Positions 3,411 through 64,000 of a stretch of 64,000 bases of DNA are shown piece after piece. The DNA is from Octopus sinensis (Eukaryota): NCBI RefSeq assembly GCF_006345805.1, contig NW_021833305.1:1-64000 (forward strand). Direction: 5' to 3'. The number at the start of each line of letters is the position of its first letter. Within the stretch, counting starts at the first letter, position 1. The notes beneath the pieces are model-generated. The model saw nothing but the letters and a program-made list of their open reading frames with translations, had not been told where the DNA came from and searched no databases. Both the position numbers and the translations under genes were made by a program.

Positions 3411-4700
3411 TATGTATATACTTATACTGTTAATGTTCTTACCGTTGTTGTTGTTGTTATTGTTATCTCTTCCTATATATTACAAGTGGAGACTCATTAT
3501 CACAAACGAATATCTCCTGGTTTTCATGTTTTCTAGTTTTAATTTTTAATTTTTAATTATTGACATTAATTATTAGTCTTCTATTGTCTATTATTTTTTT
3601 TAATATGTCTATTTTATTTCATTTTATATTATTAATCGATTTTGTTTAGAACAAAGTGTTTTAGCGGTTCATATGACCATCACTATAGAATAAATATTTC
3701 GTTGTTAGACTATGGGATATTCTCTTCAGGATTATTGCTTCTACCTTATTCCTGCTTCTATATCATTTCAAATCCCGTAAGGAATTGTTCTAGGTACATT
3801 GATAATGAATTAATTATAAGCCGAGATGACAATGTCCCCACACGAGTTTCCTTTGCAATCATGTTCCTGGATTTACATTATTCTTCTAGTACAATACCTT
3901 CAATTCCCAGTGTGTCGAAAGAGACGTTAATCCCCCCCCCCAGAAGTTATGTTACACAATGTCACTGGCAATGAGATAACAAGAAAAATCAAGAATGAAA
4001 CAAGTTTTTTTTTAGAAAAAACTTTTAAACAAATCAAAACACTTTATTTTCGACTGCATCCCTTCCGCCTTTCTACCGATTTCATTATAAATGCATATGT
4101 GTAAAAAGTAAAAAAGTATACCCCAACATTTTCCAGGTGAATGTGGAAGTTGTAAAACGGGTATTTTGTAGTGGAGATTGGAAGTGATGAGTCAACACAG
4201 CATAATATATATAAAACGAGGAAATTATTGATAAATCATTGACATTTCACATTAGTCGCATTGGAAAATCATTCCTGTTCATTTGAAAGGTTGTTGATGG
4301 GGTTGTTATATTTTAATATTATAACGAAACTGCAAGGAACCTGTTCAAATATACTAAAATGTATAAAAATGTTCATTTCAGAGACAAATCGAGAGAAGTA
4401 TACACCCACGTATATATTTTATATCATCATATATATATTTGTAGGGCGGGTATGGAAAAATATGATTAAAACACTAGCTGACATGCAATTTAATAAGAAA
4501 TTTTGATGAAACGTATACACATTTTTGTCACATGACCAATTATTACAATATACCAGCTCATCTTAGCAACATATATGCCTCTCTTCTCTCTCCCTCCCCC
4601 TCTCCCTCTCGTCTAGCCACACACACACACACACACTTTCGTTTCGTTTCTTTCCTTTCTCCCGTATGCTTATATATAGTATATATATATATATATATAG

Positions 4701-4735
<35 letters not shown>

Positions 4736-4802
4736 ATATATAATTAATCAATATAGGCAGGGACGGGAATGCCTCGTGAAAAATATCTGTTCCGACTTGG
4801 CT

Positions 4803-4911
4803 ATTTCTTACTGATGGATCTAAGGGCCTATGGTAGATTGGCTTGATTTAATTTAATCAGGTTAGTTTACCATTAAACAGTAGATGAAACGGTGTGCATC
4901 GTATAAGAAAT
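4803..4911 (+). ncRNA. Type I hammerhead, unit 1 (core variant CTGATGG, 2-nt insertion in helix III)
   Basis: Same architecture as unit 4; A9 replaced by G (4817); helix III CGGTGTGCATCG; GTA 4901-4903. Confidence 0.75.
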
Positions 4912-5293
4912 TACAGGGGAAATGTTTTTTAATTTTCTCCTGGTTTACGGAATTGATGTTATTTTGCGGTTTTAAAGCTTTTGGCTGTTATTTCTAGTGG
5001 GTGAATGGCCTATTATGGCCGTTCCTTGATTGTGATGTTGAACTTAAAAATGGTCTATGACTATTTAATTTTTTCCCACTAGGCCGCTGGTGGCAAAAAA
5101 ATTCTACAAAATTTTTCTGCCACCCTATATTGATTAATTATGAATTTTCTGGTTAGTTCCGTAATGGAATCGGCGGCTTATATTTATTTGCTGCCGATAA
5201 AGTGGCGCGAATGCAATGATTTGAACATTTTAGGTCAGATATTGCCGAGGCAGGGGAGGGAATGCCTCGTGAAAAATATCTGTTCCGACTTGG

Positions 5294-5400
5294 ATTTCTT
5301 AATGATGAATCTAAGGGCCTATGGTAGATTGGCTTGATTTAATTTAGTCAGGTTAGTTTACCATTAAACAGTAGATGAAACGGTGCATCGTATAAGAAAT
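5294..5400 (+). ncRNA. Type I hammerhead, unit 2 (core variant ATGATGA, probably inactive)
   Basis: C3 replaced by A at 5302; helices, GAAA (5377-5380) and GTA (5390-5392) retained. Confidence 0.75.
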
Positions 5401-5785
5401 ACAGGGTAAATGTTTTTTAATTTTCTCCTGGTTTACGGAATTGATGTTATTTTGCGGTTAAAGCTTTTGGGCTGTGTTATTTCTAGTGGGTGAATGGCCT
5501 ATTATGGCCGTTCCTTGATTGTGATGTTGAACTTAAAAATGGTCTATGACTATTTAATTTTTTCCCACTAGGCCGCTGGTGGCAAAAAAATTCTACAAAA
5601 TTTTTCTGCCACCCTATATTGATTAATTATGAATTTTCTGGTTAGTTCCGTAATGGAATCGGCGGCTTATATTTATTTGCTGCCGATAAATTTGGCGCGA
5701 GTGCGATGATTTGAACATTTTAGGTCAGATATTGCCGAGGCAGGGACGGGAATGCCTCGTGAAAAATATCTGTTCCGACTTGGCT

Positions 5786-5891
5786 ATTTCTTACTGATGA
5801 ATCTAAGGGCCTATGGTAGATTGGCTTGATTTAATTTAATCAGGTTAGTTTACCATTAAACAGTAGATGAAACGGTGCATCGTAAAGAAAT
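5786..5891 (+). ncRNA. Type I hammerhead, unit 3 (intact core, 1-nt deletion after the cleavage site)
   Basis: CTGATGA 5794-5800, GAAA 5869-5872, GTA 5882-5884, then AAGAAAT instead of TAAGAAAT. May be a sequencing or assembly indel. Confidence 0.8.
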
Positions 5892-6273
5892 TACAGGGTA
5901 AATGTTTTTTAATTTTCTCCTGGTTTACGGAATTGATGTTATTTTGCGGTTAAAGCTTTTGGCTGTTATTTCTAGTGGGTGAATGGCCTATTATGGCCGT
6001 TCCTTGATTGTGATGTTGAACTTAAAAATGGTCTATGACTATTTAATTTTTTCCCACTAGGCCGCTGGTGGCAAAAAAATTCTACAAAATTTTTCTGCCA
6101 CCCTATATTGATTAATTATGAATTTTCTGGTTAGTTCCGTAATGGAATCGGCGGCTTATATTTATTTGCTGCCGATAAATTGGCGCGAGTGCGATGATTT
6201 GAACATTTTAGGTCAGATATTGCCGAGGCAGGGACGGGAATGCCTCGTGAAAAATATCTGTTCCGACTTGGCT

Positions 6274-6380
6274 ATTTCTTACTGATGAATCTAAGGGCCT
6301 ATGGTAGATTGGCTTGATTTAATTTAATCAGGTTAGTTTACCATTAAACAGTAGATGAAACGGTGCATCGTATAAGAAAT
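6274..6380 (+). ncRNA. Type I hammerhead ribozyme, intact copy (array unit 4)
   Basis: Helix I ATTTCTTA 6274-6281 / TAAGAAAT 6373-6380; CTGATGA 6282-6288; helix II ATCTA 6289-6293 / TAGAT 6352-6356 with an inner 19-bp hairpin (6301-6319/6326-6344); GAAA 6357-6360; helix III CGGTGCATCG 6361-6370; cleavage triplet GTA 6370-6372. Confidence 0.9.
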
Positions 6381-6763
6381 TACAGGGTAAATGTTTTTTA
6401 ATTTTCTCCTGGTTTACGGAATTGATGTTATTTTGCGGTTAAAGCTTTTGGCTGTTATTTCTAGTGGGTGAATGGCCTATTATGGCCGTTCCTTGATTGT
6501 GATGTTGAACTTAAAAATGGTCTATGACTATTTAATTTTTTCCCACTAGGCCGCTGGTGGCAAAAAAATTCTACAAAATTTTTCTGCCACCCTATATTGA
6601 TTAATTATGAATTTTCTGGTTAGTTCCGTAATGGAATCGGCGGCTTATATTTATTTGCTGCCGATAAATTTGGCGCGAGTGCGATGATTTGAACATTTTA
6701 GGTCAGATATTGCCGAGGCAGGGACGGGAATGCCTCGTGAAAAATATCTGTTCCGACTTGGCT

Positions 6764-6869
6764 ATTTTTTACTGATGAATCTAAGGGCCTATGTAGATTG
6801 GCTTGATTTAATTTAATCAGGTTAGTTTACCATTAAACAGTAGATGAAACGGTGCATCGTATAAGAAAT
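6764..6869 (+). ncRNA. Type I hammerhead, unit 5 (intact core)
   Basis: CTGATGA 6772-6778, TAGAT 6841-6845, GAAA 6846-6849, GTA 6859-6861. A C>T change in helix I leaves a G:U pair. Confidence 0.85.
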
Positions 6870-7861
6870 TACAGGGTAAATGTTTTTTAATTTTCTCCTG
6901 GTTTACGGAATTGATGATGTATTTTGCGTTAAAGCTTTTGGCTGTTATTTCTAGTGGGTGAATGGCCTATTATGGCCGTTCCTTGATTGTGATATATATA
7001 TATATATATATATATACCTACTTATCTATCAAGGAAGAAGGAAAAAAAGTAAAACTGAAAGAAATGTATAAAAACACGGTAAATTAATGAATGGATAGAC
7101 ATACATACATACATACATGCCTAGATGGCGTCTGTATTGAATTTTCTAACTTAATTTAAGGTAGGAAAATATGTCAAGCGCTAACGTGGACGAAAGTTTT
7201 TTTAATATAAGACAGAAACTTCATTCTAAATTAATTATAATGGTTTATTTGCAATTTTCAAGTATTTGTATGACATGCAATCTATCGCCAATAAAACGAG
7301 CATTTTGAAATGAAAAAAAAATATGCGTCTATACAGTCTATATATGAATGCCTGTGTACGCTTGTGCTGTGTGTACGGGAGATATGATGCTAACATTGGC
7401 AGGGATATTAAAACGATTGTCGTCTTTGGTTTTCAATGTCTTAACGTTATACGGAAACTAATCGTGTTTCTATACTGTGTGTATCGTAGACATTTAGTGT
7501 AATTATTATATGCTATTGCAATCAATAGCTCAAATTCCAATTCACACGCTCAATATGTCTTCACAAGTATGTTGACAAAAGCAACAAAATCTTAATGTTT
7601 TTGTTGTTGTTTTTTTGATATATTGGAAAAAGTACTTTGCTATTAGTTCTCGGTTCAAATCTCCGTTGACAACAGCCGACTTAGTTTTTTAATCGTTTCA
7701 CCATCATTAAATTGAAATATAAATATATAAGGCGTGTGATATTCAAACTGATTCAAATATATTGATAAACATGTTGTGAACTGATTTTCTAACATTTCTT
7801 TCGGTTTTTTTCCCCAGGTGATTTGTTCTGAAAATGCACAGGGATAAAAGGAAATCTAAAG

Positions 7862-9542
7862 ATGGCCGCCACCCCTCAGCAACGCAGTTGGTGTGCCCTG
7901 AAATTTTCAAGATGAGTGTTGTGGCCGTGCATCGTGCTTTTAAACTCAAGCATCATATAATTCCACCTACATCCACTCCGTTCGGAAATGGTACAATGAT
8001 TTTAGACCGACAGAGTGTATTTGGGATCAGAGAAAAGTATATTCTGACTGACCATCAGTTTGAGAGAAAGTTATTGATCGAGTTAGACGTAAATTCGTGC
8101 AGATTCCTAAAATGTCAGCATGAAGATCTAGCCGCGAGTTTCACATCCTCAAAAGCACAGTTTGTACGATCCTGCACAAACACTTTAAGTTTCAGTCTTA
8201 TAAACTTCAATGAGTCCAGAACTCCATCCGAAAGATAATGGAATACGATTTGAATTTTGTGAGAATATCAAGCAAGTAATATATAGGCGCAGGAGTGGCT
8301 GTGTGGTAAGTAGCTTGCTAACCAACCACATGGTTCCGGGTTCAGTCCCACTGCGTGGCATCTTGGGCAAGTGTCTTCTGCTATAGCCCCGGGCCGACCA
8401 ATGCCTTGTGAGTGGATTTGGTAGACGGAAACTGAAAGAAGCCTGTCGTATATATGTATATATATATATATGTATGTGTGTGTGTTTGTGTGTCTGTGTT
8501 TGTTCCCCTAGCATTGCTTGACAACCGATGCTGGTGTGTTTACGTCCCCGTCACTTAGCGGTTCGGCAAAAAAGGACCGATAGAATAAGTACTGGGCTTA
8601 CAAAAAGAATGAGTCCCGGGGTCGTGTTGCTGGACTAAAAGGCGGTGCTCCAGCATGGCCGCAGTCAAAATGACTGAAACAAGTAAAAGAAAAGAAAGAA
8701 TAAAAAAAAGAGTCCCCCAACATGCTAACATGGAAGATGGACGTTAAACGATGATGATGATGATGATGATGAATGATAGCCTGCTGTCAAAAATCATTTT
8801 CAGTGATGAAGCAATATTTCACTTGAACGGCAATGTCAATAGGCATAACGTTCCGATATGGGGACCTAAATATCCCCACGCAACCCAGGAAATTGAGCGA
8901 CACTCAACAAAAGGTAATGTGTTTTGTGACGCATCACACAGGAAAGTGTATGACCCTTTTTTTTCTGTGAGGGAGGAACAGTTACTGGTGAAAGTTATCT
9001 GGAGATATTGACTAATTTGATCTTTCCACAACTAGTTGCTGAGGATGATGACTACCTTTTCCAGCAAGATGGTGCTCCCTTGCACTGGCATCTCACTCTC
9101 AGGAGATTTCCCACAAACCATTTGCCAAACAGATGGAGTGGTCGTGTTGGACAAGATAATCAGGTGTTCTGCAAGTGTCCTGTGAGGTCACCAGACCTAA
9201 GTGTTTGTGATTTCTTTCTTTGAGGAATATGGGAAGAGCACTGTTTATGTACCACCACTGCCAGCAACTCTGCAGAGGGGAACATTTCGATCACTGAAGC
9301 AGTTTGCATGGTAATTGCAGATATGCTGCTCAGCATCTGGATCGAATTTGGACTAATACATCAATGTTTTCCGAGCAACAAGAGGGGGAGGGGGCACATC
9401 ATTGAGTGCTTTTAATGCTATCCTGTATCACATGAAACTGAATGAAACCCTGCATCTGGAGCTACAATCAGCGAAAGATTATTAGAATGAATTTATTTGT
9501 TATATCTATTCGAAATCAAGGAGTGTTTCTATGGACACCCTA
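7862..9542 (+). pseudogene. Tc1/mariner-superfamily transposase relic, DD41D/rosa-like, interrupted by a SINE (8285-8770)
   Basis: Frameshifted motifs: MAATPQQRSWCAL, IIFSDEAIFHLNGNVNRHN..WG, FQQDGAP.H...RWSGR...RSPDLSVCDFFL*G. D-D spacing is 46 aa by my count. Right end ...GGACACCCTA is TIR-like; no left TIR seen. Confidence 0.85.
8285..8700 (+). mobile_element. tRNA-derived SINE family A (CORE-like segment, internal TA/TG microsatellite)
   Basis: A box TGGCTGTGTGG, B box GGTTCAGTCC, CTTGGGCAAGTGTC CORE-like motif, tail ...GACTGAAACAAGTAAAAGA. Resembles the Octopus OR-type SINEs (from memory). Confidence 0.9.
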
Positions 9543-10981: not shown

Positions 10982-11218
10982 AAAGGCGTCGAGCTGCCAG
11001 AAACGTTAGCACACCGGGCAAAATGCTTAGCGGCACTTCGTCTGCTGCTACGTTCTGAGTTCAAATTCCGCCGAGGTTTACGTTGCCTTTCATCCTTTCT
11101 GGGTCGATTATATAAGTACCAGTTACGCACTGGGGTCGATATAATCGACTTAATCCGCTTGTCTGTCCTTGTTTGTCCCCTCTGTGTTTAGCCCCTTGTG
11201 GGTAGTAAAGAAATAGGC
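10982..11218 (+). mobile_element. SINE family B with a 21-bp target site duplication
   Basis: GGCG.CGAGCTG.CAGAAACGTTAGCA...GAGTTCAAATTCC...GCCTTTCATCCTTT; TSD AAAAGACACTACCTCCCAGTA at 10961-10981 and 11219-11239. Confidence 0.9.
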
Positions 11219-11672
11219 AAAAGACACTACCTCCCAGTAGCGCTCAGCGAGACGACCCGATGCATTTCGTTCTTTTGTGTTCCTTTTACTGAAAATTAGT
11301 TGCTGCCAACAACATGCCTGAACAAATTTGCGATCGCCTACGAATTATGAGAAGACAGTGAATAACTCCAGTATGCAGATCTAAGGCATTACCAAATTAG
11401 AAAAAGCTATATATCAATCATAATATATACACACAGTTTATAAACCAGTTTCTGCGGTGTATATATACACAAGCATTCTTGCTCGCACATGCACATATAC
11501 ACATATATACGCATATATATGTAGCTATATGCATATATATTCATATATGGAGTATTCGGGTTACATTTTACAGTTCACAAGAAACGAGAAATAATACAGA
11601 ATTTCCCATCCAAATATAAACTAATTGTAAGAAGTTAAAATATAAACTTAATAATTGCATGTACATATAACT

Positions 11673-19737: not shown

Positions 19738-19952
19738 ATATTTCTTTACTGCCCACAAGGGGCTAAACATAGAGGGGACAAACAAAGACAGACAAAGGGA
19801 TTAAGTCGATTATAACGACCCCCGTACGTAACTGGTACTTAATTTATCGACCCCGAAAGGATGAAAGGCAACGTCGACCTCGGTGGAATTTGAACTCAGA
19901 ACGTAGCGGCATTTCGCCCGGTGTGGTAACGTTTCCGCCAGCTCGCCGCCTT
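19738..19952 (-). mobile_element. SINE family B with a 17-bp TSD
   Basis: TTTTAGTATGTATATAT at 19721-19737 and 19953-19969. Confidence 0.85.
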
Positions 19953-19981
19953 TTTTAGTATGTATATATGTAAAGACATTA

Positions 19982-20298
19982 GAGGCGCGTGGCTTAGTGG
20001 TCAGGGAATTCGGCTCGCGATCCTAAGGTCGTGATTTCAATTCCCGGCGACGCGTTGTGTCCTTGAGCAAGAAACGTTATTTCCCTTTGCTACTCAGCTG
20101 GCAAAAATGAGTTGTACCTGTATTTCAAAAATGGTCAGAATTGACACACTCTGGGTCACGCTGAAGTTCCAGTGAGCTACGTTAAAGCTACGCGTGTCTG
20201 TGGAGTTCTCAGCCACTTGCTCGTTAATTTTACGAGCAAACTGTTCCATTGATCGAATCGACTGGAACCCTCGTCATCGCAACCGACGGAGTGCCAGT
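19982..20298 (+). mobile_element. tRNA-derived SINE family D (CORE-like TGTGTCCTTGAGCAAG)
   Basis: A box TGGCTTAGTGG, B box-like GATTTCAATTCC, ends GACGGAGTGCCAG. Confidence 0.75.
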
Positions 20299-20386: not shown

Positions 20387-20493
20387 AAAAGGTATGGAAC
20401 GTTTCACGAATTTGCGTGTCGTCCTGTCGCAAGGGCCATGCTAATCTTCTGAGTATCGTTCCAATTTTAGTGTATGTACAACCGAAAGATGTA
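20387..20493 (-). pseudogene. U6: U6 snRNA pseudogene (near full length)
   Basis: Minus strand ACTAAAATTGGAACGATACTCAGAAGATTAGCATGGCCCTTGCGACAGGACGACACGCAAATTCGTGAAACGTTCCATAC matches U6. The ACAGAGA box is mutated to ACTCAGA. Confidence 0.9.
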
Positions 20494-20572
20494 TACATAT
20501 ATTTATATGCGTACGTATGCATGTATGTATGTATGTATGCATGGATGTATACAGGTATGTGTATACATACAA

Positions 20573-20810
20573 AGCGGCGAGCTGGCAGAAACGTTAGCAC
20601 ACCGGGCGAAATGCTCAGCGGTATTTCGTCTGCGGCTACGTTCTGAGTTCAAATTCCACCGAGGTCGACTTTACCTTTCATCCTTTCGGGGTCGATAAAT
20701 TAAGTACCAGTTACGCACTGGGGTCGATATAATCGACTTAATCCATTTGTATGTCGTCCCCTTGTTCGTCCCCTCTGTGTTTAGCCCCTTATGGGTAGTA
20801 GAGACATAGG
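20573..20810 (+). mobile_element. SINE family B
   Basis: Same sequence as 10982-11218. Confidence 0.9.
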
Positions 20811-20832
20811 CCTGTGTGTTTGTATGCATGCA

Positions 20833-20876
<44 letters not shown>

Positions 20877-21199
20877 TAGACACATACGTGTGCATTTATG
20901 CTATTTCGATCCCTGTTAATATTGGATTGTAATGTTGGGTCTAGATCAGGAATTTAGGAAATTGATTACATTGACCCTGCTAATACTTATGTTATCGATT
21001 CTGAAAGAATGCAACAGAAAGTCAATTTTATTGACCCGATGATGGATGTAAGCAAAGTCGACATCGGTGCAATTTGAACTCAGAACGTAAAGCCTTCTGA
21101 GCCAACATTTTTGGCAGACTTAGGAATTTTGAGTAGTATTAGTATAACTGCAATTAACAATTCTGCTTTAGCTGATCAAGAGTAATATTATCAACAAGA

Positions 21200-21376
21200 T
21201 AGCGATCAAGTCGATTACATCAACCCTAGTGCGTAACTACTACTTAATTTATCGACCCCGAAAGGATGGATGTCAAAGTCGACCACGGCGGAATTTAAAC
21301 TCAGAACGTAACGGCAGACGAAATACTACTAAGCATTTCGCCCGGCGTGCTAACGTTTCTGCCGGCTCGCCGCCTT
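21200..21376 (-). mobile_element. SINE family B, partial
   Basis: Reverse complement of the family B head and central domain. Confidence 0.85.
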
Positions 21377-21714
21377 ACCAATCATATTAAACACATTGCT
21401 GGAAGCTGGTACGTGTATATTAATGACTTGGTACAGGGTATTTCGTTATGCAACCATAATATACAACAAAGTATATTAAACGCTTTTATTAGTCAATTCT
21501 GTATTCCACTGTGTTAAGGTTAATACACGCTCATTCCATTGCACTGTAGCCATAAAGATTTCTGTTATATAATACACTTCAATTACACCTACGATACAAC
21601 AGAATCACGTTGCAACGGCCTGAATTAAAACTACATTTAACTTCCCAGCATTATAACTAAAGTACACGGTAACGCTACAGGACACGCCAACACTACAACG
21701 CAGCTGGAATACCG

Positions 21715-24770: not shown

Positions 24771-25271
24771 CAAAAACAGGATCAACGACATGCCCATCGC
24801 CCGCAACAAGAATAACAACAACGGAAAGGTTATTAATAACACAATGCCTTTGATTGTGTTTTCTTACGCTAAATACGAAAACGAATGGCGTGAATTCTAC
24901 GTCTGAAGAACGGTATGTTATTTGTCAGTATTGATCTTGTAAAGAGAAGAAAAGATGGCACCAAGGTCACACGAACCACTGTAATTAAGTCATCGATGGG
25001 TTTTCGTAACACGTTATTGCACCACCCCTAACATCTCGTGAATTTGCATAAGATATCTGTTCACAGATATTCATAGACGTAATGACACAGACACGTACAC
25101 AACACACAGAGATGTGGTATACATATGCACTTATATATATATAAGTACACGAATATATATATATATATATATACGTAAATATATATATATATAATATTAT
25201 ATATATATATATAGATATATATATATGTACATATATAATATATATAATAAATAGATATATAATATATATGG

Positions 25272-25304
<33 letters not shown>

Positions 25305-25360
25305 ATATATATATATCTAAAAAAATATTATTAGATAATTTGAACTGACTTATTGGAAGT

Positions 25361-25403
25361 CCACCTGAAGATTGTCGATCAAGACAAGAAACAATTGTAG
25401 TGG
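25361..25403 (+). ncRNA. Minimal type I hammerhead (Penelope-like type)
   Basis: CCAC-CTGAAGA-TTGTC-gatcaa-GACAA-GAAA-CAATTG-TA-GTGG: all core bases present, palindromic helix III, GUA site. Confidence 0.8.
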
Positions 25404-32660: not shown

Positions 32661-33142
32661 GGCGGCGAGCTGGCAGAATCGTTAGCACGCTGGGCGAAAT
32701 GCGTAGCCGTAATTCGTCTGCCGTTACGTTCTGAGTTCAAATTCCGCCGAGGTAGACTTTGCCTTTCATCATTTCGGGGTCGATAAATTAAGTACCTGTT
32801 ACACACTTCGGTCGATATAATCGACTTAATCTGTTTGTCTGTCCTTGTTTGTCCTCTCTGTGTTTAACCACTTGTGGGTAGTAAAGATTAGTATTTCGTC
32901 TGCCACTACGTTCCGAGTTCAAATTCCGCCGAGGTCGATCTTGCCTTTCATCCTTTCGGGGTCGATTAAATAAGTACCAGTTACACACTGGTGTCGATAT
33001 AATCGACTTAATCCGTTCGTCTTTCCTTGTTTTCCCCCTCTGTCTTTAGCCCCTTGTAGGTAGCAAAGAAATAGGCATTTCGACTATCTTTACGTTCTGA
33101 GTTCAAATTCCGCCGAGGTCGACTTTGCCTTTCATCCATTCG
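32661..33142 (+). mobile_element. SINE family B with the internal unit tandemly repeated (~3x)
   Basis: TTTCG...TACGTTC.GAGTTCAAATTCCGCCGAGGT recurs three times. Confidence 0.85.
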
Positions 33143-36013: not shown

Positions 36014-36954
36014 TTTATAGCAAATAAAAACCAGAATCCGAGCAAATGAAGATACTATATATTTTCAGGGCTACTATAAACATTTTAATGTTATTAATTC
36101 TGTCAAGAAATCATAGTTCAAGACTTCGATTTCACTGAAAGAAACTTACCAGAGCCTCCGCGTCTGTCTTTGGGCTACTCTGTATATTTATAGCTACTCT
36201 GTATATTTATAGCAAATAAAAACCAGAATCCGAGCAAATGAAGATACTATATATTTTCAGGGCTACTATAAACATTTTAAAGTTATTAATTCTATCAAGA
36301 AATCATAGTTCAAGACTTCGATTTCATTGAAGAAAACTTACCAGAGCCTCCGCGTCTGTCTTTGGGCTATTCTGTATATTTATAGCTACTCTGTATATTT
36401 ATAGCAAATAAAAACCAGAATCCGAGCAAATGAAGATACTATATATTTTCAGGGCTACTATAAACATTTCAAATTATTAATTTTGTCAAGAAATCATAGT
36501 TCAGACTTCGATTTCACTGAAAGAAACTTACAGAGCCTCCGCGTCTGTCTTTGGGCTACTCTGTATATTTATAGCTACTCTGTATATTTATAGCAAATAA
36601 AAACCAGAATCCGAGCAAATGAAGATACTATATATTTTCAGGGCTACTATAAACATTTTAAAGTTATTAATTCTATCAAGAAATCATAGTTCAAGACTTC
36701 GATTTCATTGAAGAAAACTTACCAGAGCCTCCGCGTCTGTCTTTGGGCTATTCTGTATATTTATAGCTACTCTGTATATTTATAGCAAATAAAAACCAGG
36801 ATCCGAGCAAATGAAGATACTATATATTTTCAGGGCTACTATAAACATTTCAAATTTATTAATTTTGTCAAGAAATCATAGTTCAAGACTTCGATTTCAC
36901 TGAAGAAAACTTACCAGAGCCTCCGCGTCTGTCTTTGGGCTACTCTGTATATTT
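36014..36954. repeat. Tandem array of ~4.9 x 192 bp with alternating variants
   Basis: TAGCAAATAAAAACCAG recurs at 36018, 36210, 36402, 36591 and 36783; each junction has an internal 18-bp duplication GCTACTCTGTATATTTATA. Confidence 0.95.
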
Positions 36955-37439: not shown

Positions 37440-37855
37440 AGGAAATCGATTTAATTGACCCACGTGCTCAACTGATACTTGTTTCATCGACCCTGAATGA
37501 ATGAAAGGCACGTTTGACCTCGGGGCCGTTTGTACTCAGAACGTAAAGACGAACGAAATACCTATTTCTATTTCTTTATTACCCACAAGGGGCTAAACAC
37601 AGAGGGGACAAACAAGGACAGACATAGGTATTAAGTCGATTACATAGACCCCAGTGCATAACTGGTACTTAATTTATCGACCCCGAAAGGATGAAAGGCA
37701 AAGTCGACCTCGGCGGAATTTGAACTCACAACGTAACGCAGACGAAATACCGCTAAGCATTTCGCCCGGCGTGCTAACGTTTCTGCCAGCTCGACGAACG
37801 AAATACCGTTAAGCAATTTGCCCGGCATAATAACGATTCTGGATGCTGCCCGCCT
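37440..37855 (-). mobile_element. SINE family B composite. Further B-like pieces: ~34360-34850, 40930-41350, 42240-42460, 44395-44580
   Basis: Reverse complement of family B with a repeated unit. Confidence 0.8.
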
Positions 37856-38283
37856 CAATCTATATGGCTAGGTGAAGCCAACCCTAAGAGCAATGTTATG
37901 TACGTTTACAATACGTAATATAATGGAAATATATATTCTATGGTATGAAAATAGGTGTGGAGTAGAACTAGAGCAAAATATTTCATTGAAGTCTAAATAG
38001 ACAAAACAGAACTTGCCTATCTTAATGGTGATTATTATTTTCTTTTTTAGATGCCACAGCGTTAATTAGTAGATGAAAGCCAAATTTAATGACGATTCTC
38101 CTTTTCCAAAACCTTTGAAATTATACTCGAAAACAGGGATAATTATCCTCTGACGGAAAGCTAGTCAAAATACTTTAAACAGAATGGATATTGGCAAAAT
38201 GCCTGAGGCCCTGGTTATTATGTTTGACTAGAGATCAATCATATCTCTCGCCCGAAAACAAGCGATAGGTGTACATGTTCAAA

Positions 38284-44659: not shown

Positions 44660-45194
44660 TTGGTTTGTCCAGAAAGTTCGTGCCGATTTATAGTAGCTTA
44701 ACTTTCGACTTATTTTAGAACATAGCTGAGTCCATAAAATATAATTTGACTACACCTCCATTTAGAACACTGTTTAAGCTATCTTTTCGCGAAAGAAAGT
44801 TTATATTCCTATAACCTGTGTTATGAAAGTTTATTTTCGGCACTTGATGTTTTAGGAACCAGACAAAAATTGCTACAGCTCGGCTTGGATGTCTTGCCTC
44901 ACCCTTCTTATTCACCAGATATTGTCTCTTCGGATTTCTATTTATACAGGTCTCTGCAGAATTGTCTTAATGGTAAAAATTTCAATTCCTTGGATGACGT
45001 AAAAAGATATCTTGAAGAACTATTTGCCATGAAACCACCTCAACTCTGTGAAGAGGGAATTTTTAAGTTAAAGAAAAGATGGAGACGCATTGTGCAACAA
45101 AATGGTTCATATTTGGTTGATTAAAAATGTAATGGCAAGCATTTATTGATCTTTTTCTTTCTTTAAAATCGGCACGAACTTTCCGAACAACCAA
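44660..45194 (+). mobile_element. Internally deleted mariner element with TIRs and TA target duplication
   Basis: TA|TTGGTTTGTCCAGAAAGTTCGTGCCGATTT ... AAATCGGCACGAACTTTCCGAACAACCAA|TA. C-terminal transposase peptide HPSYSPDIVSSDFYLYRSLQN...RWRRIVQQNGSY at 44870-45124. Confidence 0.9.
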
Positions 45195-48639: not shown

Positions 48640-49005
48640 CTTGGGAGAGGGACCAGTTGAGTACATTGACCCCAGTGTTTTACCGGTACAGAATTCATCG
48701 AATCCGAAAAAAATGGAAGACGATGTCAGCCTCCGTTGAATTTGAACTCAGAAAGTAGCTACGTGCGAAATACCTATTTCTTTACTACCCACAAGGGGCT
48801 AAACACAGAGAGGACAAACAAAGACAGACAAACGGATTAAGTCGATTACATCGACTCCAGTGCGTAACTGGTACTTATTTAATCGACTCCGAAAGGATGA
48901 AAGGCAAAGTCGACCACAGCGGAATTTGAACTGAGTACATAACGGCAGACGAAATACTGCTAAGCATTTCGCCCGGCGTGCTAATGTTTCTGCCAGCTCG
49001 CCGTT
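48640..49005 (-). mobile_element. SINE family B composite
   Basis: Reverse complement of family B. Confidence 0.85.
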
Positions 49006-49309
49006 TGAGAATCAATGACAACAATAAAAGTAAGAAGAAGCAGGAAGAGGAGGAGGGGGAGGAGGAGGAGGAAGAGGAGGTGGAAAATAATAATTATTGT
49101 TATTATGCTTCAGGCGTCAGAAAATAAAACTCAGAAAATAAAAGAAAGCATAATTACAAGAAAAGTACCTAATTACCTCAAGAATAATTAAGCAACAGAC
49201 TAAAGGACAATGAATTTCTCATATATACATGTATATATGTAACTACTTATCTAACAGCCAAACGCACACAGACACACACACACATATATATGAATATACA
49301 TACATACAT

Positions 49310-59960: not shown

Positions 59961-60286
59961 TGGTGTGACATCAAGTAAGGTTGAAACTACATTTCTCCCT
60001 GGGCCGCATGATTTATTCCTTATATTTTTAAATACGCGCGGTGGAATATAACTATAAGTTTATGCATATGTGTGAATAAGTATAAGAAAATCCCCGTTGT
60101 GCGTTAGGTAAATGTGAAAACCTTTAATGAATGGAACAGCGGGATGTAGCTGTATTTCAAAATCTGAGTACCTATTTCTTTACTGCCCACAAGGGGCTAA
60201 ACACAGAGGGGACAAACAAGGACAGACAAACGGATTAAGTATATTATATCGACCCCAGTGCGTAACTGGCACTTATCTGAGTACCA

Positions 60287-60703
60287 TACTCTTTTACTCA
60301 TTTAGTTGTTTCAGTCATTTGACTGCGGCCATGCTGGATACCGCCTTTTTTAGTCGAGCATATCGATCCCAGGACTTATACTTTGTAAGCCTAGTACTTA
60401 TTATATCGGTCTCTTTTGCTGAACCGCTAAGTAACGGGGACGTAAACACACCAGCATCGGTTGTCAAGCGATGTTGGGGGGGGGACAAACACAGACACAC
60501 AAACACACACACATATATACATACATATATATATATATACGACGGGCTTCTTTCAGTTTCCGTCTACCAAATCCACTCACAAAGCTTTGGTCGGCCCGAG
60601 GCTACAGTAGAAGACACTTGCCCAAGATGCCACGCAGTGGAACTGAACCTGGAAGCGTGTGGTTGGTAAGCAAGCTACTTACCACACAGCCACTCCTGCG
60701 CCT
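60287..60703 (-). mobile_element. SINE family A, full length (abuts a family B fragment at ~60170-60278)
   Basis: Reverse complement of family A. Confidence 0.9.
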
Positions 60704-60957: not shown

Positions 60958-60992
60958 GTTTCTGACGAAGAGCTCCGCTCGAAACGTTAAAC
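60958..60992 (+). ncRNA. Minimal hammerhead in a Penelope-like terminal repeat (~60870-61098)
   Basis: GTTT-CTGACGA-A-GAGC-tcc-GCTC-GAAA-CG-TT-AAAC; extra A between A9 and G10.1; palindromic ACGT helix III; ends in (TA)n. Confidence 0.7.
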
Positions 60993-63637: not shown

Positions 63638-64000
63638 CCCGGACCAGATGGGATTCATAGCTATTGGCTGAAGAGATGCCACGCGGTGCATGAAAGACCA
63701 GCAGCACAATTGAGTGTGTCCAGAATGGTACAGTCGCCACATGGATGGTGATTGGGAGGACTACACTTATAATGAAAGATAGAAGAAAGGGGAATGTTGT
63801 GGGAAACTACCGTCCCATAGCGTGCCTAAACATAATCTGGAAGATACTCACTGGAAGATTGCGGCAAAGACATATACTTTCCTGGCACATGAAGAAATAC
63901 TACCAAAGGAAGAAAAAGGATGTAGGAAGAGTTTTCAGAGTACCAAGTATCAACTAGTCATCGATAAAGCACATCTTGAGGCATTGTAAAAAGCATCATA
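63638..64000 (+). pseudogene. Reverse transcriptase N-terminal relic of an R4/NeSL-type (REL-endonuclease) non-LTR element; runs off the window
   Basis: PGPDGIHSYWLK, GRTTLIMKD..KG..VGNYRPIACLNIIWKILTG, ILPKEEKGC, TKYQLVIDK, with frameshifts. Confidence 0.8.

What the first reader, a model, noticed from the sequence alone, without database searches (positions are those of the whole stretch)
4755..6992. Retrozyme-like array: ~490-bp tandem unit, each carrying a type I hammerhead ribozyme
Seen: about 4.6 tandem units. Each has helix I (ATTTCTTA/TAAGAAAT), CTGATGA, helix II (ATCTA/TAGAT), GAAA, a short helix III and a GTA cleavage triplet, in the exact type I order. Predicted cleavage is after 4903, 5392, 5884, 6372 and 6861 (spacings 489, 492, 488, 489 nt). 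Established: non-LTR retrozymes (newt/axolotl satellite 2, schistosome SM-alpha, mussel and coral repeats) are tandem type I HHR repeats processed to monomeric and circular RNAs; those I recall are mostly about 150-400 nt. Inference: this is a non-coding, self-cleaving retroelement with a ~489-nt monomer, possibly an undescribed cephalopod retrozyme family. I cannot verify novelty without a search.
Basis: partly seen in the sequence, partly recalled or inferred. Interest (0 to 1): 0.92.

Follow-up and report, generated by a model that had tools for sequence, protein, structure and literature searches.

The report
Retrozyme-like hammerhead ribozyme tandem repeat
A 489-bp non-coding DNA unit repeated 4.6 times carries a hammerhead self-cleaving RNA motif in each copy (two copies intact, three damaged), the known layout of animal "retrozymes", which are mobile elements that spread through small circular RNAs; it is probably a new family of a known kind, not a new kind of element.

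Summary
The tandem array is real: 4755-6993, period 489, 4.6 copies, 97% identity. The predicted cleavage sites and their spacings are exact.

- **Motif state.** The type I hammerhead layout is present in all five copies. Only copies 4 and 5 are intact. Copy 1 has A9G, copy 2 has C3A, and copy 3 has lost U1.1.
- **Chance.** A descriptor search gives 0.005 hits per shuffled 64-kb window.
- **Support not used to find the motif.** Helix II continues into a 19-bp hairpin. Helix III is a 12-nt quasi-palindrome that predicts the classic double hammerhead. The monomer is highly self-paired (z about -7). The unit is non-coding and 37% GC. The array sits in a (TA)n microsatellite. An 18-nt inverted piece of the unit abuts its 5' end.
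- **Against.** No Rfam hammerhead model matches, even at E<=10. Position 10.1-11.1 is A-U, not G-C. The core is not preferentially conserved among the copies. No relative, transcript or second locus could be reached.

Best reading (0.7): a young, decaying insertion of a non-LTR retrozyme, probably mobilised by a Penelope-like element. This is a new member of a known kind. The 489-nt size is within the published range. The host was not identified.

The parts
4755..6993 (+). Tandem array of a 489-bp non-coding unit, 4.6 copies. It starts at unit position 342 and ends at unit position 130, counting from the predicted cleavage site.
   Evidence: TRF; BLAST of the unit against the window; alignment; longest ORF 65 aa; no protein relatives.
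4803..4911 (+). Hammerhead copy 1, defective: core CUGAUGG (A9 to G at 4817) and a 2-nt insertion in loop 3.
5294..5400 (+). Hammerhead copy 2, defective: core AUGAUGA (C3 to A at 5302) and a CT deletion just 5' of helix I.
5786..5891 (+). Hammerhead copy 3: core intact, but U1.1 is deleted, so the pair next to the cleavage site is lost (GUA|AAGAAAU).
   Evidence: fails the descriptor
6274..6380 (+). Hammerhead copy 4, intact. Helix I 6274-6281/6373-6380; CUGAUGA 6282-6288; helix II 6289-6293/6352-6356 enclosing a 58-nt arm with a 19-bp stem; GAAA 6357-6360; helix III 6360-6371; A17 at 6372.
   Evidence: descriptor; MFE fold reproduces helices I and II, z -4.8; canonical fold -31.9 vs MFE -33.8 kcal/mol
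6764..6869 (+). Hammerhead copy 5: core intact. Helix I C to U keeps a U-G pair. A 1-nt deletion lies in the helix II arm. A17 at 6861.
   Evidence: descriptor; alignment
6373..6861 (+). The one 489-nt monomer bounded by two intact hammerheads; the RNA this locus could still release if transcribed.
   Evidence: inference; monomer folding
4740..4757 (-). 18-nt inverted copy of unit positions 218-235 (CCTATATTGATTAATTAT). It abuts the 5' end of the array with AGG microhomology.
   Evidence: BLAST 18/18; local alignment. It is the only match longer than 13 nt to the unit outside the array.
4671..4742 (.). (TA)n microsatellite on the left flank; putative split target.
   Evidence: TRF; sequence
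6992..7016 (.). (AT)n microsatellite on the right flank; putative other half of the target.
   Evidence: TRF; sequence

Best explanation
The array is a genomic insertion of a non-autonomous, non-LTR retrozyme. This is a non-coding element whose + strand RNA carries one type I hammerhead per 489-nt unit.

Proposed mechanism:
1. A multimeric + strand transcript is made. Transcription is inferred and the promoter is unknown.
2. Neighbouring hammerheads pair through their quasi-palindromic helix III to form double hammerheads. [quoted passage not shown] The structure is predicted in silico; the chemistry follows from hammerhead knowledge.
3. A host tRNA ligase of the RtcB type circularises the monomer (inferred from Cervera and de la Pena 2020, PMC7229834).
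4. A reverse transcriptase, most likely from a Penelope-like element, copies the circle round and round from a nick in a (TA)n microsatellite. This gives a head-to-tail cDNA array whose ends fall at arbitrary unit positions, with a short inverted piece at the 5' junction. The structure is shown; the process is inferred.

Since insertion the copies have drifted by about 1% without selection. Three of the five ribozymes are now damaged.
For: **The motif**
- The hammerhead core, helices and order are present and intact in copies 4 and 5.
- Chance expectation is 0.005 per shuffled window for a relaxed descriptor. No shuffle matched the observed quality.
- The MFE fold of 6270-6383 gives helix I (8 bp), helix II (5 bp) and a 19-bp coaxial extension. 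The energy is -34.3 against -19.3 +/- 3.1 kcal/mol, and 0 of 200 shuffles fold as well.
- The extension contains five G-U pairs. The hammerhead domain accordingly folds better on the + strand (z -4.6) than on the - strand (z -2.4).

**Helix III and the double hammerhead**
- ACGGUGCAUCGU is weak as a hairpin (-1.2 kcal/mol). As an intermolecular duplex it forms 12 bp (-19.5).
- Two domains co-fold into a double hammerhead: -81.1 against 2 x -33.8 kcal/mol.
- A short helix III with a palindromic loop is the published hallmark of metazoan type I hammerheads (PMC4209133).

**The monomer**
- It is highly self-paired: linear z -7.1, circular z -6.65, 60% of bases paired.
- It is non-coding: ORFs are at most 65 aa and a six-frame query finds no protein relative.
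- GC is 37%.

**The insertion site**
- Both ends lie in (TA)n. Only 9% of window positions are that close to such a run.
- Microsatellite, including (TA)n, targeting is described for Penelope-like elements (PMC8557442).
- An 18/18 inverted unit fragment abuts the 5' end. Inverted 5' pieces are typical of Penelope-like element insertions (PMC8557442).
- The array ends are not at cleavage sites, as expected for rolling-circle copying.

**Genome context**
- Two further minimal type I hammerheads with palindromic helix III lie in the same window. The expectation is 0.03 per window, or 0.003 with the palindrome. The genome therefore carries hammerhead-bearing elements.
Against: - No Rfam hammerhead family matches at gathering score, nor at E<=10 in a 2.35-kb search.
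- I attribute this to the 58-nt insertion in helix II and to the A-U pair at 10.1-11.1. That explanation was not tested.
- Rfam also misses the two minimal motifs, but those are not validated ribozymes either.
- G10.1-C11.1, which is highly conserved in canonical hammerheads, is A-U here. No loop 1 / loop 2 tertiary motif is recognisable. Activity may therefore be low.
- Within the array the critical positions are not preferentially conserved. There are 5 events in 243 critical nt against 15 in 1989 other nt (odds ratio 2.8, p 0.058; curated, test).
- There are too few substitutions to show covariation.
- No second locus, relative or transcript could be found.
- Template-switching during DNA replication could also produce an inverted junction with microhomology.
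Confidence: 0.7

Rival explanations
1. Ordinary minisatellite or satellite. A 489-bp segment was amplified at the DNA level by unequal crossing-over or replication slippage, and it happens to contain a hammerhead-like string with no RNA function.
For: - No Rfam hammerhead match.
- Core bases are mutated in 2 of 5 copies, with no excess conservation.
- The A-U pair at 10.1-11.1 is atypical.
- Only one locus is seen, and the window is full of other tandem repeats.
Against: - The motif is expected 0.005 times per shuffled window even with a relaxed descriptor.
- Features not used in the search also fit: a palindromic helix III giving a double hammerhead, and a helix II insertion that is a clean 19-bp hairpin with G-U pairs.
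- An inverted junction fragment sits at the array boundary.
Confidence: 0.1
2. Not an independent retrozyme but a remnant of an autonomous Penelope-like element: a run of its pseudo-LTR, or 3' region, that has lost the RT/endonuclease body.
For: - Penelope-like elements carry type I hammerheads in pseudo-LTRs, form partial tandems, have inverted 5'-truncated copies at the upstream end, and prefer microsatellite targets such as (TA)n (PMC4209133, PMC8557442).
- Retrozyme units are reported to be related to pseudo-LTRs (bioRxiv 10.64898/2026.07.22.740005).
- Junction and flanks here fit.
Against: - 4.6 complete head-to-tail units have no trace of an RT or GIY-YIG reading frame in or beside the array.
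- Hammerheads of these elements are usually minimal, with little or no helix III and a bulged base before 10.1. This one has a 3-4 bp helix III with a tetraloop and no bulge.
- The distinction is partly semantic if retrozymes derive from pseudo-LTRs.
Confidence: 0.12
3. A genuine hammerhead-derived repeat whose ribozyme was never efficient. The cause would be the A-U pair at 10.1-11.1, the long helix II arm and the lack of tertiary contacts. The repeat would now be only a structured non-coding repeat or satellite transcript, without circular RNA or mobility.
For: - It deviates from G10.1-C11.1, and no loop-loop motif is present.
- Penelope-type hammerheads show very low activity in vitro (PMC4209133).
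- Three of the five copies are damaged.
Against: - Copies differ by only about 1%, so the amplification is recent and something copied it.
- Retrozyme hammerheads with weak base pairs at the foot of helix II (axolotl Amex2, a U-U mismatch) still yield circular RNAs (PMC7229834).
Confidence: 0.08

Closest known systems
Metazoan non-LTR retrozymes (Cervera and de la Pena 2020, PMC7229834): mussel Mytilus galloprovincialis 350-390 bp, coral Acropora millepora 220-245 bp, axolotl 330/350 bp
   Same: - Head-to-tail repeats of a few hundred bp, with one type I hammerhead per unit.
- No LTR, PBS, PPT or ORF, and GC below 50%.
- The monomer is predicted to be highly self-paired.
- The mussel hammerheads also lack the classical loop 1 / loop 2 nucleotides.
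   Different: - The unit is longer than those three examples, though within the 51-972 bp later reported for retrozyme families.
- Helix II carries a 58-nt insertion that forms a 19-bp hairpin.
- Position 10.1-11.1 is A-U.
- There is no sequence similarity to test, and no expression data.
Newt / salamander satellite 2 hammerhead and axolotl HHR_Amex1
   Same: Helix III is too weak to stand alone and is capped by a palindromic tetraloop. Two neighbouring motifs are therefore predicted to act as a double hammerhead (PMC7229834, PMC4209133).
   Different: Helix III here has 3 Watson-Crick pairs plus a G-U, not 1 bp. The helix II arm is far longer. The amphibian motifs keep the conserved loop-loop contacts.
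Minimal hammerheads of Penelope-like element pseudo-LTRs (Cervera and de la Pena 2014, PMC4209133)
   Same: - Type I topology in a tandem setting.
- Palindromic 15.2-16.2 and loop 3.
- Longer-than-usual helix II.
- Poorly defined loop 1.
- Association with microsatellite targets and inverted 5' fragments (PMC8557442).
   Different: - There is no flanking RT-endonuclease ORF.
- There is no bulged base between A9 and 10.1.
- There is no G10.1-C11.1 pair.
- A real helix III hairpin is present.
Schistosoma SM-alpha SINE-like hammerhead repeats
   Same: A non-coding, multi-copy repeat that carries a type I hammerhead.
   Different: From my own knowledge, SM-alpha has a canonical compact hammerhead that Rfam Hammerhead_1 recognises. 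The present motif is not recognised.
Plant LTR retrozymes (PMC4918200)
   Same: The same proposed life cycle: ribozyme-cut transcript, circular RNA, reverse transcription by a helper element.
   Different: The plant elements have type III hammerheads inside about 350-bp LTRs, a tRNA-Met primer binding site, a polypurine tract and 4-bp target duplications. None of these is present here.

Membership tests
Hammerhead ribozyme, type I | Conserved core C3 U4 G5 A6 N7 G8 A9 ... G12 A13 A14 ... A15.1-U16.1, H17, in the order helix I / II / III with helix I open | tested here: met
   Intact in copies 4 and 5, and the core is also intact in copy 3. A9G in copy 1 and C3A in copy 2.
Hammerhead ribozyme, type I | Match to a curated covariance model (Rfam Hammerhead_1, HH9, HH10, II, 3) | tested here: not met
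   No hammerhead family at gathering score over the window, nor at E<=10 over 4700-7050.
Hammerhead ribozyme, type I | G10.1-C11.1 pair at the foot of helix II | tested here: not met
   A10.1-U11.1 in all five copies.
Hammerhead ribozyme, type I | Tertiary contact between loop 1 (helix I) and loop 2 | tested here: inconclusive
   Helix I is 8 continuous bp. A 7x7 internal loop follows the 5-bp helix II.
Hammerhead ribozyme, type I | Short helix III with palindromic loop, allowing a dimeric (double) hammerhead (metazoan type I) | tested here: met
   ACGGUGCAUCGU: hairpin -1.2, intermolecular 12-bp duplex -19.5 kcal/mol. Two domains co-fold as a double hammerhead.
Hammerhead ribozyme, type I | Site-specific Mg2+-dependent self-cleavage | not testable with these tools
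   Needs in vitro transcription.
Metazoan non-LTR retrozyme | Head-to-tail tandem repeat of about 150-450 bp (51-972 bp in the 2026 survey), with one type I hammerhead per unit | tested here: met
   Period 489, 4.6 copies, with a motif in every unit, 2 of them intact.
Metazoan non-LTR retrozyme | Non-coding; no LTR, PBS or PPT; GC below 50% | tested here: met
   ORFs at most 65 aa. No protein relatives. GC 37%. No terminal repeats other than the units themselves.
Metazoan non-LTR retrozyme | Monomer RNA predicted to be stable and highly self-paired | tested here: met
   z -7.1 linear; z -6.65 circular, 60% paired.
Metazoan non-LTR retrozyme | Dispersed multi-copy family in the genome with insertion signatures | not testable with these tools
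   No eukaryotic genome collection is available. There is only one locus in the window. The junction features ((TA)n on both sides, an 18-nt inverted fragment) are suggestive only.
Metazoan non-LTR retrozyme | Expressed as monomeric linear and circular RNAs | not testable with these tools
   No RNA data are available.
Metazoan non-LTR retrozyme | Co-occurrence with Penelope-like elements in the same genome | tested here: inconclusive
   No Penelope-like ORF is in the window. Two minimal hammerheads of the Penelope type lie at 25361-25403 and 60958-60992. The host was not identified.

The most novel reading that the evidence does not exclude
The most novel reading still allowed is an active hammerhead variant that standard covariance models cannot see. 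It would combine a 68-nt helix II arm, an A-U pair at 10.1-11.1 and obligate dimer cleavage. It would generate abundant 489-nt circular RNAs in a lineage (probably cephalopods) where no retrozyme has been reported. If so, hammerhead and retrozyme censuses based on Rfam or compact descriptors systematically miss a class of elements with expanded helices.
Probability: 0.3. Interest if true: 0.55.

Novelty: new member of a known kind. Interest (0 to 1): 0.42.

Why it matters
Retrozymes are the only known genome-encoded route to circular RNA that uses a ribozyme rather than back-splicing. Their mobilisation by Penelope-like elements is still only inferred.

A young array such as this one is a convenient natural substrate for testing the rolling-circle, target-primed model. 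It has about 1% divergence, two intact neighbouring ribozymes, a (TA)n target and an inverted junction piece.

It also illustrates a detection gap. A motif that satisfies the hammerhead rules but has a long insertion in helix II is invisible to Rfam models, so retrozyme surveys may undercount.

If the host is a cephalopod, this would add that lineage to the list of retrozyme hosts. That is an incremental gain, because molluscs (mussels) are already on the list.

Tried and rejected
1. **Rfam.** A gathering-score scan of the whole window found only a U6 snRNA. A permissive scan of 4700-7050 found only spurious microRNA-like hits on an internal hairpin and on the (TA)n flank.
2. **DNA scans for relatives.** Exact 21-mers from the hammerhead gave 0 hits in viral contigs, 0 in prokaryotic genomes and 0 in the first metagenome scan. 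The second metagenome scan gave one hit, L001. It lies in an aconitase-like bacterial coding region with no repeat, so it is a chance match and was rejected.
3. **Protein searches for relatives.** I used a six-frame pseudo-protein of the unit, hoping that gene callers had produced ORFs from other copies. There were no hits. The same trick with ORFs from the unique flanks, meant to fetch an orthologous or empty site, also gave no hits. Exact look-ups of two window ORFs found nothing on record.
4. **Host identification.**
   - A literature search for strings from the SINE-like repeat found nothing.
   - Transposon fragments hit only anonymous metagenome proteins at 66% identity or less, apart from one short 81% match.
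   - Pfam gave nothing on the fragments.
   - No tRNA was found.
   - The host remains unverified.
5. **Selection test within the array.** The automated event count was inflated by misaligned indels and was replaced by a curated count. It shows no preferential conservation.
6. **Covariation.** There are only 10 substitutions, which is uninformative.
7. **Alternative helix II.** I considered the nearer TAGAT (6307-6311) as the 3' strand. I rejected it because GAAA does not follow it.
8. **Pol III transcription.** I considered Pol III transcription of the unit. It is unlikely, because the + strand has several runs of five or six T within each unit (read directly).
Full report
**Observation.** Tandem Repeats Finder reports a single array at 4755-6993: period 489, 4.6 copies, 97% matches and 1% indels. 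BLAST of one unit against the window finds the four full and two partial copies at 97-100% identity. It finds nothing else longer than 18 nt.

The spacings are 489, 492, 488 and 489.

It is overstated in one respect. The alignment of the units shows that only copies 4 and 5 have an undamaged motif.
- Copy 1 has CUGAUGG (A9 to G, 4817) and a 2-nt insertion in loop 3.
- Copy 2 has AUGAUGA (C3 to A, 5302).
- Copy 3 has lost U1.1 (5885).
- Copy 5 has a C to U change in helix I that keeps a U-G pair, and a 1-nt deletion in the helix II arm.

**Is the motif more than chance?** I wrote a type I descriptor with these requirements:
- helix I of at least 5 bp;
- the core CUGANGA;
- helix II of at least 4 bp, spanning at most 90 nt;
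- GAAA;
- helix III of at least 2 bp starting with A15.1-U16.1;
- an H at position 17.

In the real window it finds only copies 4 and 5, on the + strand. In 200 dinucleotide-preserving shuffles of the window it finds 0.005 hits per window over both strands. No shuffle gave a hit with the observed 8/5/4-bp helices. My hand calculation from base composition gives about 2e-5 per window at the observed stringency. That figure is an inference, not a tool result.

**Anatomy (copy 4, 6274-6380).**
- Helix I is AUUUCUUA/UAAGAAAU (8 bp).
- The core is CUGAUGA.
- Helix II is AUCUA/UAGAU (5 bp), but its two strands are 58 nt apart.
- The minimum-free-energy fold of 6270-6383 recovers helix I, helix II and a continuous 19-bp stem inside the insertion. 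The energy is -34.3 against -19.3 +/- 3.1 kcal/mol, z -4.8, with 0 of 200 shuffles as stable.
- That stem has five G-U pairs. The domain therefore folds better as + strand RNA (z -4.6) than as - strand (z -2.4).
- The full canonical hammerhead fold costs only 1.9 kcal/mol more than the MFE.

Helix III (A15.1 CGG UGCA UCG U16.1) is marginal as a hairpin (-1.2 kcal/mol). It is, however, a 12-nt quasi-palindrome. Two copies pair over 12 bp (-19.5 kcal/mol). Two whole domains co-fold into the textbook double hammerhead with intermolecular helices I and III: -81.1 against 2 x -33.8 kcal/mol.

A short helix III capped by a palindromic loop, giving obligate or preferred dimer cleavage, is exactly what is described for metazoan type I hammerheads in satellites, retrozymes and Penelope-like elements (PMC4209133, PMC7229834). 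Neither this feature nor the clean hairpin in helix II was part of the search that found the motif.

**The rest of the unit.** It is non-coding. The longest ORF is 65 aa, and a six-frame pseudo-protein finds nothing among 5.8 billion proteins. GC is 37%. The 489-nt monomer is strongly structured: linear z -7.1; circular -150.1 kcal/mol, z -6.65, 60% of bases paired. The - strand is less stable in absolute terms (-109.7) but has a similar z-score. Strand specificity therefore rests on the hammerhead domain only.

**Insertion signatures.** The array lies between two (TA)n runs, 4671-4742 and 6992-7016. Only 9% of window positions are within 15 bp of such a run.

The array starts at unit position 342 and ends at position 130, not at cleavage sites. 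Immediately upstream, 4740-4757 is a perfect 18-nt inverted copy of unit positions 218-235. It is joined to the first direct unit through an AGG microhomology. It is the only match longer than 13 nt to the unit anywhere else in the window, and it sits exactly at the boundary.

Three published properties of Penelope-like elements fit these signatures: targeting of microsatellites including (TA)n, partial tandems, and an inverted 5'-truncated piece at the upstream end (PMC8557442). Such elements are the proposed helpers of animal retrozymes (PMC7229834; bioRxiv 10.64898/2026.07.22.740005). A replication template switch could give a similar junction, so this evidence is supportive rather than decisive.

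**Evidence against.**
- Rfam 15 finds no hammerhead family at gathering score in the window, nor at E<=10 in a 2.35-kb search. I attribute this to the 58-nt helix II insertion and the non-canonical A10.1-U11.1 pair.
- The same permissive search also misses two minimal hammerhead motifs elsewhere in the window. This shows limited sensitivity for non-canonical variants, although those motifs are themselves unvalidated.
- G10.1-C11.1 is described as highly conserved (PMC4209133), and here it is A-U in all copies. Axolotl Amex2 retrozymes tolerate a U-U mismatch at that position (PMC7229834).
- Within the array the critical positions are not protected. My curated tally gives 5 events in about 243 critical nt against 15 in about 1989 other nt (odds ratio 2.8, p 0.058). 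The automated tally is inflated by misaligned indels and should be ignored. This pattern is what neutral decay of an inserted copy predicts, but it gives no positive evidence of function.
- With only 10 substitutions there is no usable covariation.

**Relatives.** None could be reached. Exact 21-mers gave no hits in viral, prokaryotic and metagenome collections. The one exception was a chance hit inside a bacterial aconitase-like gene. The protein-space tricks for the unit and for its unique flanks gave nothing.

The host could not be identified. Transposon fragments hit anonymous metagenome proteins only. From memory, and unverified, the AT-rich, microsatellite-dense sequence with a recurrent SINE-like repeat resembles octopus genomes.

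The searchable literature holds no paper describing a retrozyme or a genomic hammerhead family from octopus or squid.

**Mechanism, with status of each step.**
- *Shown:* tandem architecture; motif integrity in copies 4 and 5; predicted single and double hammerhead folds; compact monomer fold; non-coding nature; (TA)n flanks; inverted junction fragment.
- *Established for the family, inferred here:* transcription of multimers; cleavage after GUA leaving 5'-OH and 2',3'-cyclic phosphate; circularisation by a tRNA ligase; rolling-circle reverse transcription by a helper RT that yields tandem cDNA (PMC7229834, PMC7761336).
- *Inferred:* a Penelope-like helper; double-hammerhead dependence; a recent insertion (about 1% divergence among units); the locus still able to release one monomer (6373-6861) between its two intact ribozymes.

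**Comparison and novelty.** It works like, and meets the testable structural criteria of, a metazoan non-LTR retrozyme. The criteria that need a genome or RNA could not be tested: dispersed copies, circular RNA and cleavage.

As a hammerhead it fails two formal tests, the Rfam model match and G10.1-C11.1. I therefore call it a hammerhead variant rather than a canonical member.

The 489-bp size is not exceptional, since retrozyme families of 51-972 bp are reported (bioRxiv 10.64898/2026.07.22.740005). Molluscs are already known hosts (the mussel).

My rating is a new member of a known kind. The long helix II arm is its one structurally unusual trait.

**Scores.** Confidence in the retrozyme reading is 0.7.

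Noticed in passing
window 25361-25403 (+): Solo minimal type I hammerhead motif: CCAC CUGAAGA UUGUC-GAUCAA-GACAA GAAA CAAUUG UA GUGG. The helix III segment ACAAUUGU is a perfect 8-nt palindrome. It lies about 45 nt downstream of a long (TA)n run (25153-25316). Two copies co-fold as a double hammerhead. Rfam does not detect it. It may be a Penelope-like element or a solo retrozyme remnant.
   Followed up: partly
window 60958-60992 (+): Second solo minimal hammerhead: GUUU CUGACGA A GAGC-UCC-GCUC GAAA CG UU AAAC. It has the bulged base before G10.1, the G10.1-C11.1 pair and the palindromic ACGU described for Penelope-like element hammerheads. The two solo motifs together have a descriptor expectation of 0.03 per shuffled window, or 0.003 with the palindrome. 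Rfam does not detect it.
   Followed up: partly
window 20388-20496 (-): U6 snRNA match (86 bits, E 1.4e-20). The invariant ACAGAGA box reads ACUCAGA and the 3' end is ACCUUU. It is probably a U6 pseudogene or retrocopy rather than a working gene.
   Followed up: no
window 36014-36954: Another young tandem array: period 192 (381 as a higher-order unit), 4.9 copies, 95-97% identity. No hammerhead was found by either descriptor, and there was no Rfam hit. Its nature is unknown.
   Followed up: partly
window 32709-33142 and many other sites (e.g. about 11000-11250, 19770-20020, 20500-20900, 21170-21390, 37640-37870, 48670-49010, 60120-60400): A SINE-like repeat of about 180 bp (core ...GTTCAAATTCCGCCGAGGTCGACTTTGCCTTTCATCC...) recurs on both strands. 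It forms a 2.4-copy tandem at 32709-33142 (84% identity). ARAGORN finds no tRNA in it. From memory it resembles octopus SINEs; this is not verified.
   Followed up: no
window 8748-9220 (+), 44750-45121 (+), 63694-63954 (+): Decayed transposon fragments. There are two Tc1/mariner-type transposase remnants; the best hits carry PF13358 or PF01359 at up to 66% identity, and the first remnant is frameshifted. There is also one reverse-transcriptase fragment with hits to PF00078 proteins. None is a Penelope-like element.
   Followed up: partly
window 6979-6987 and 7028-7036: The last bases of the array (TTCCTTGAT) and a 9-mer beyond the right-hand (AT)n (ATCAAGGAA) are inverted repeats. They form a hairpin across the microsatellite, which Rfam's permissive scan picked up as spurious microRNA-like hits. 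This could be chance or a second short inverted junction piece.
   Followed up: partly
window 5089-5124, 5578-5613, 6067-6102, 6556-6591 (+): Each full unit contains a 36-nt near-perfect hairpin (GGUGGCAAAAAAAUUCUACAAAAUUUUUCUGCCACC). It scores as a sub-threshold mir-5728-like hit (22.7 bits against a gathering score of 100). I regard it as part of the compact monomer fold, not a microRNA.
   Followed up: no
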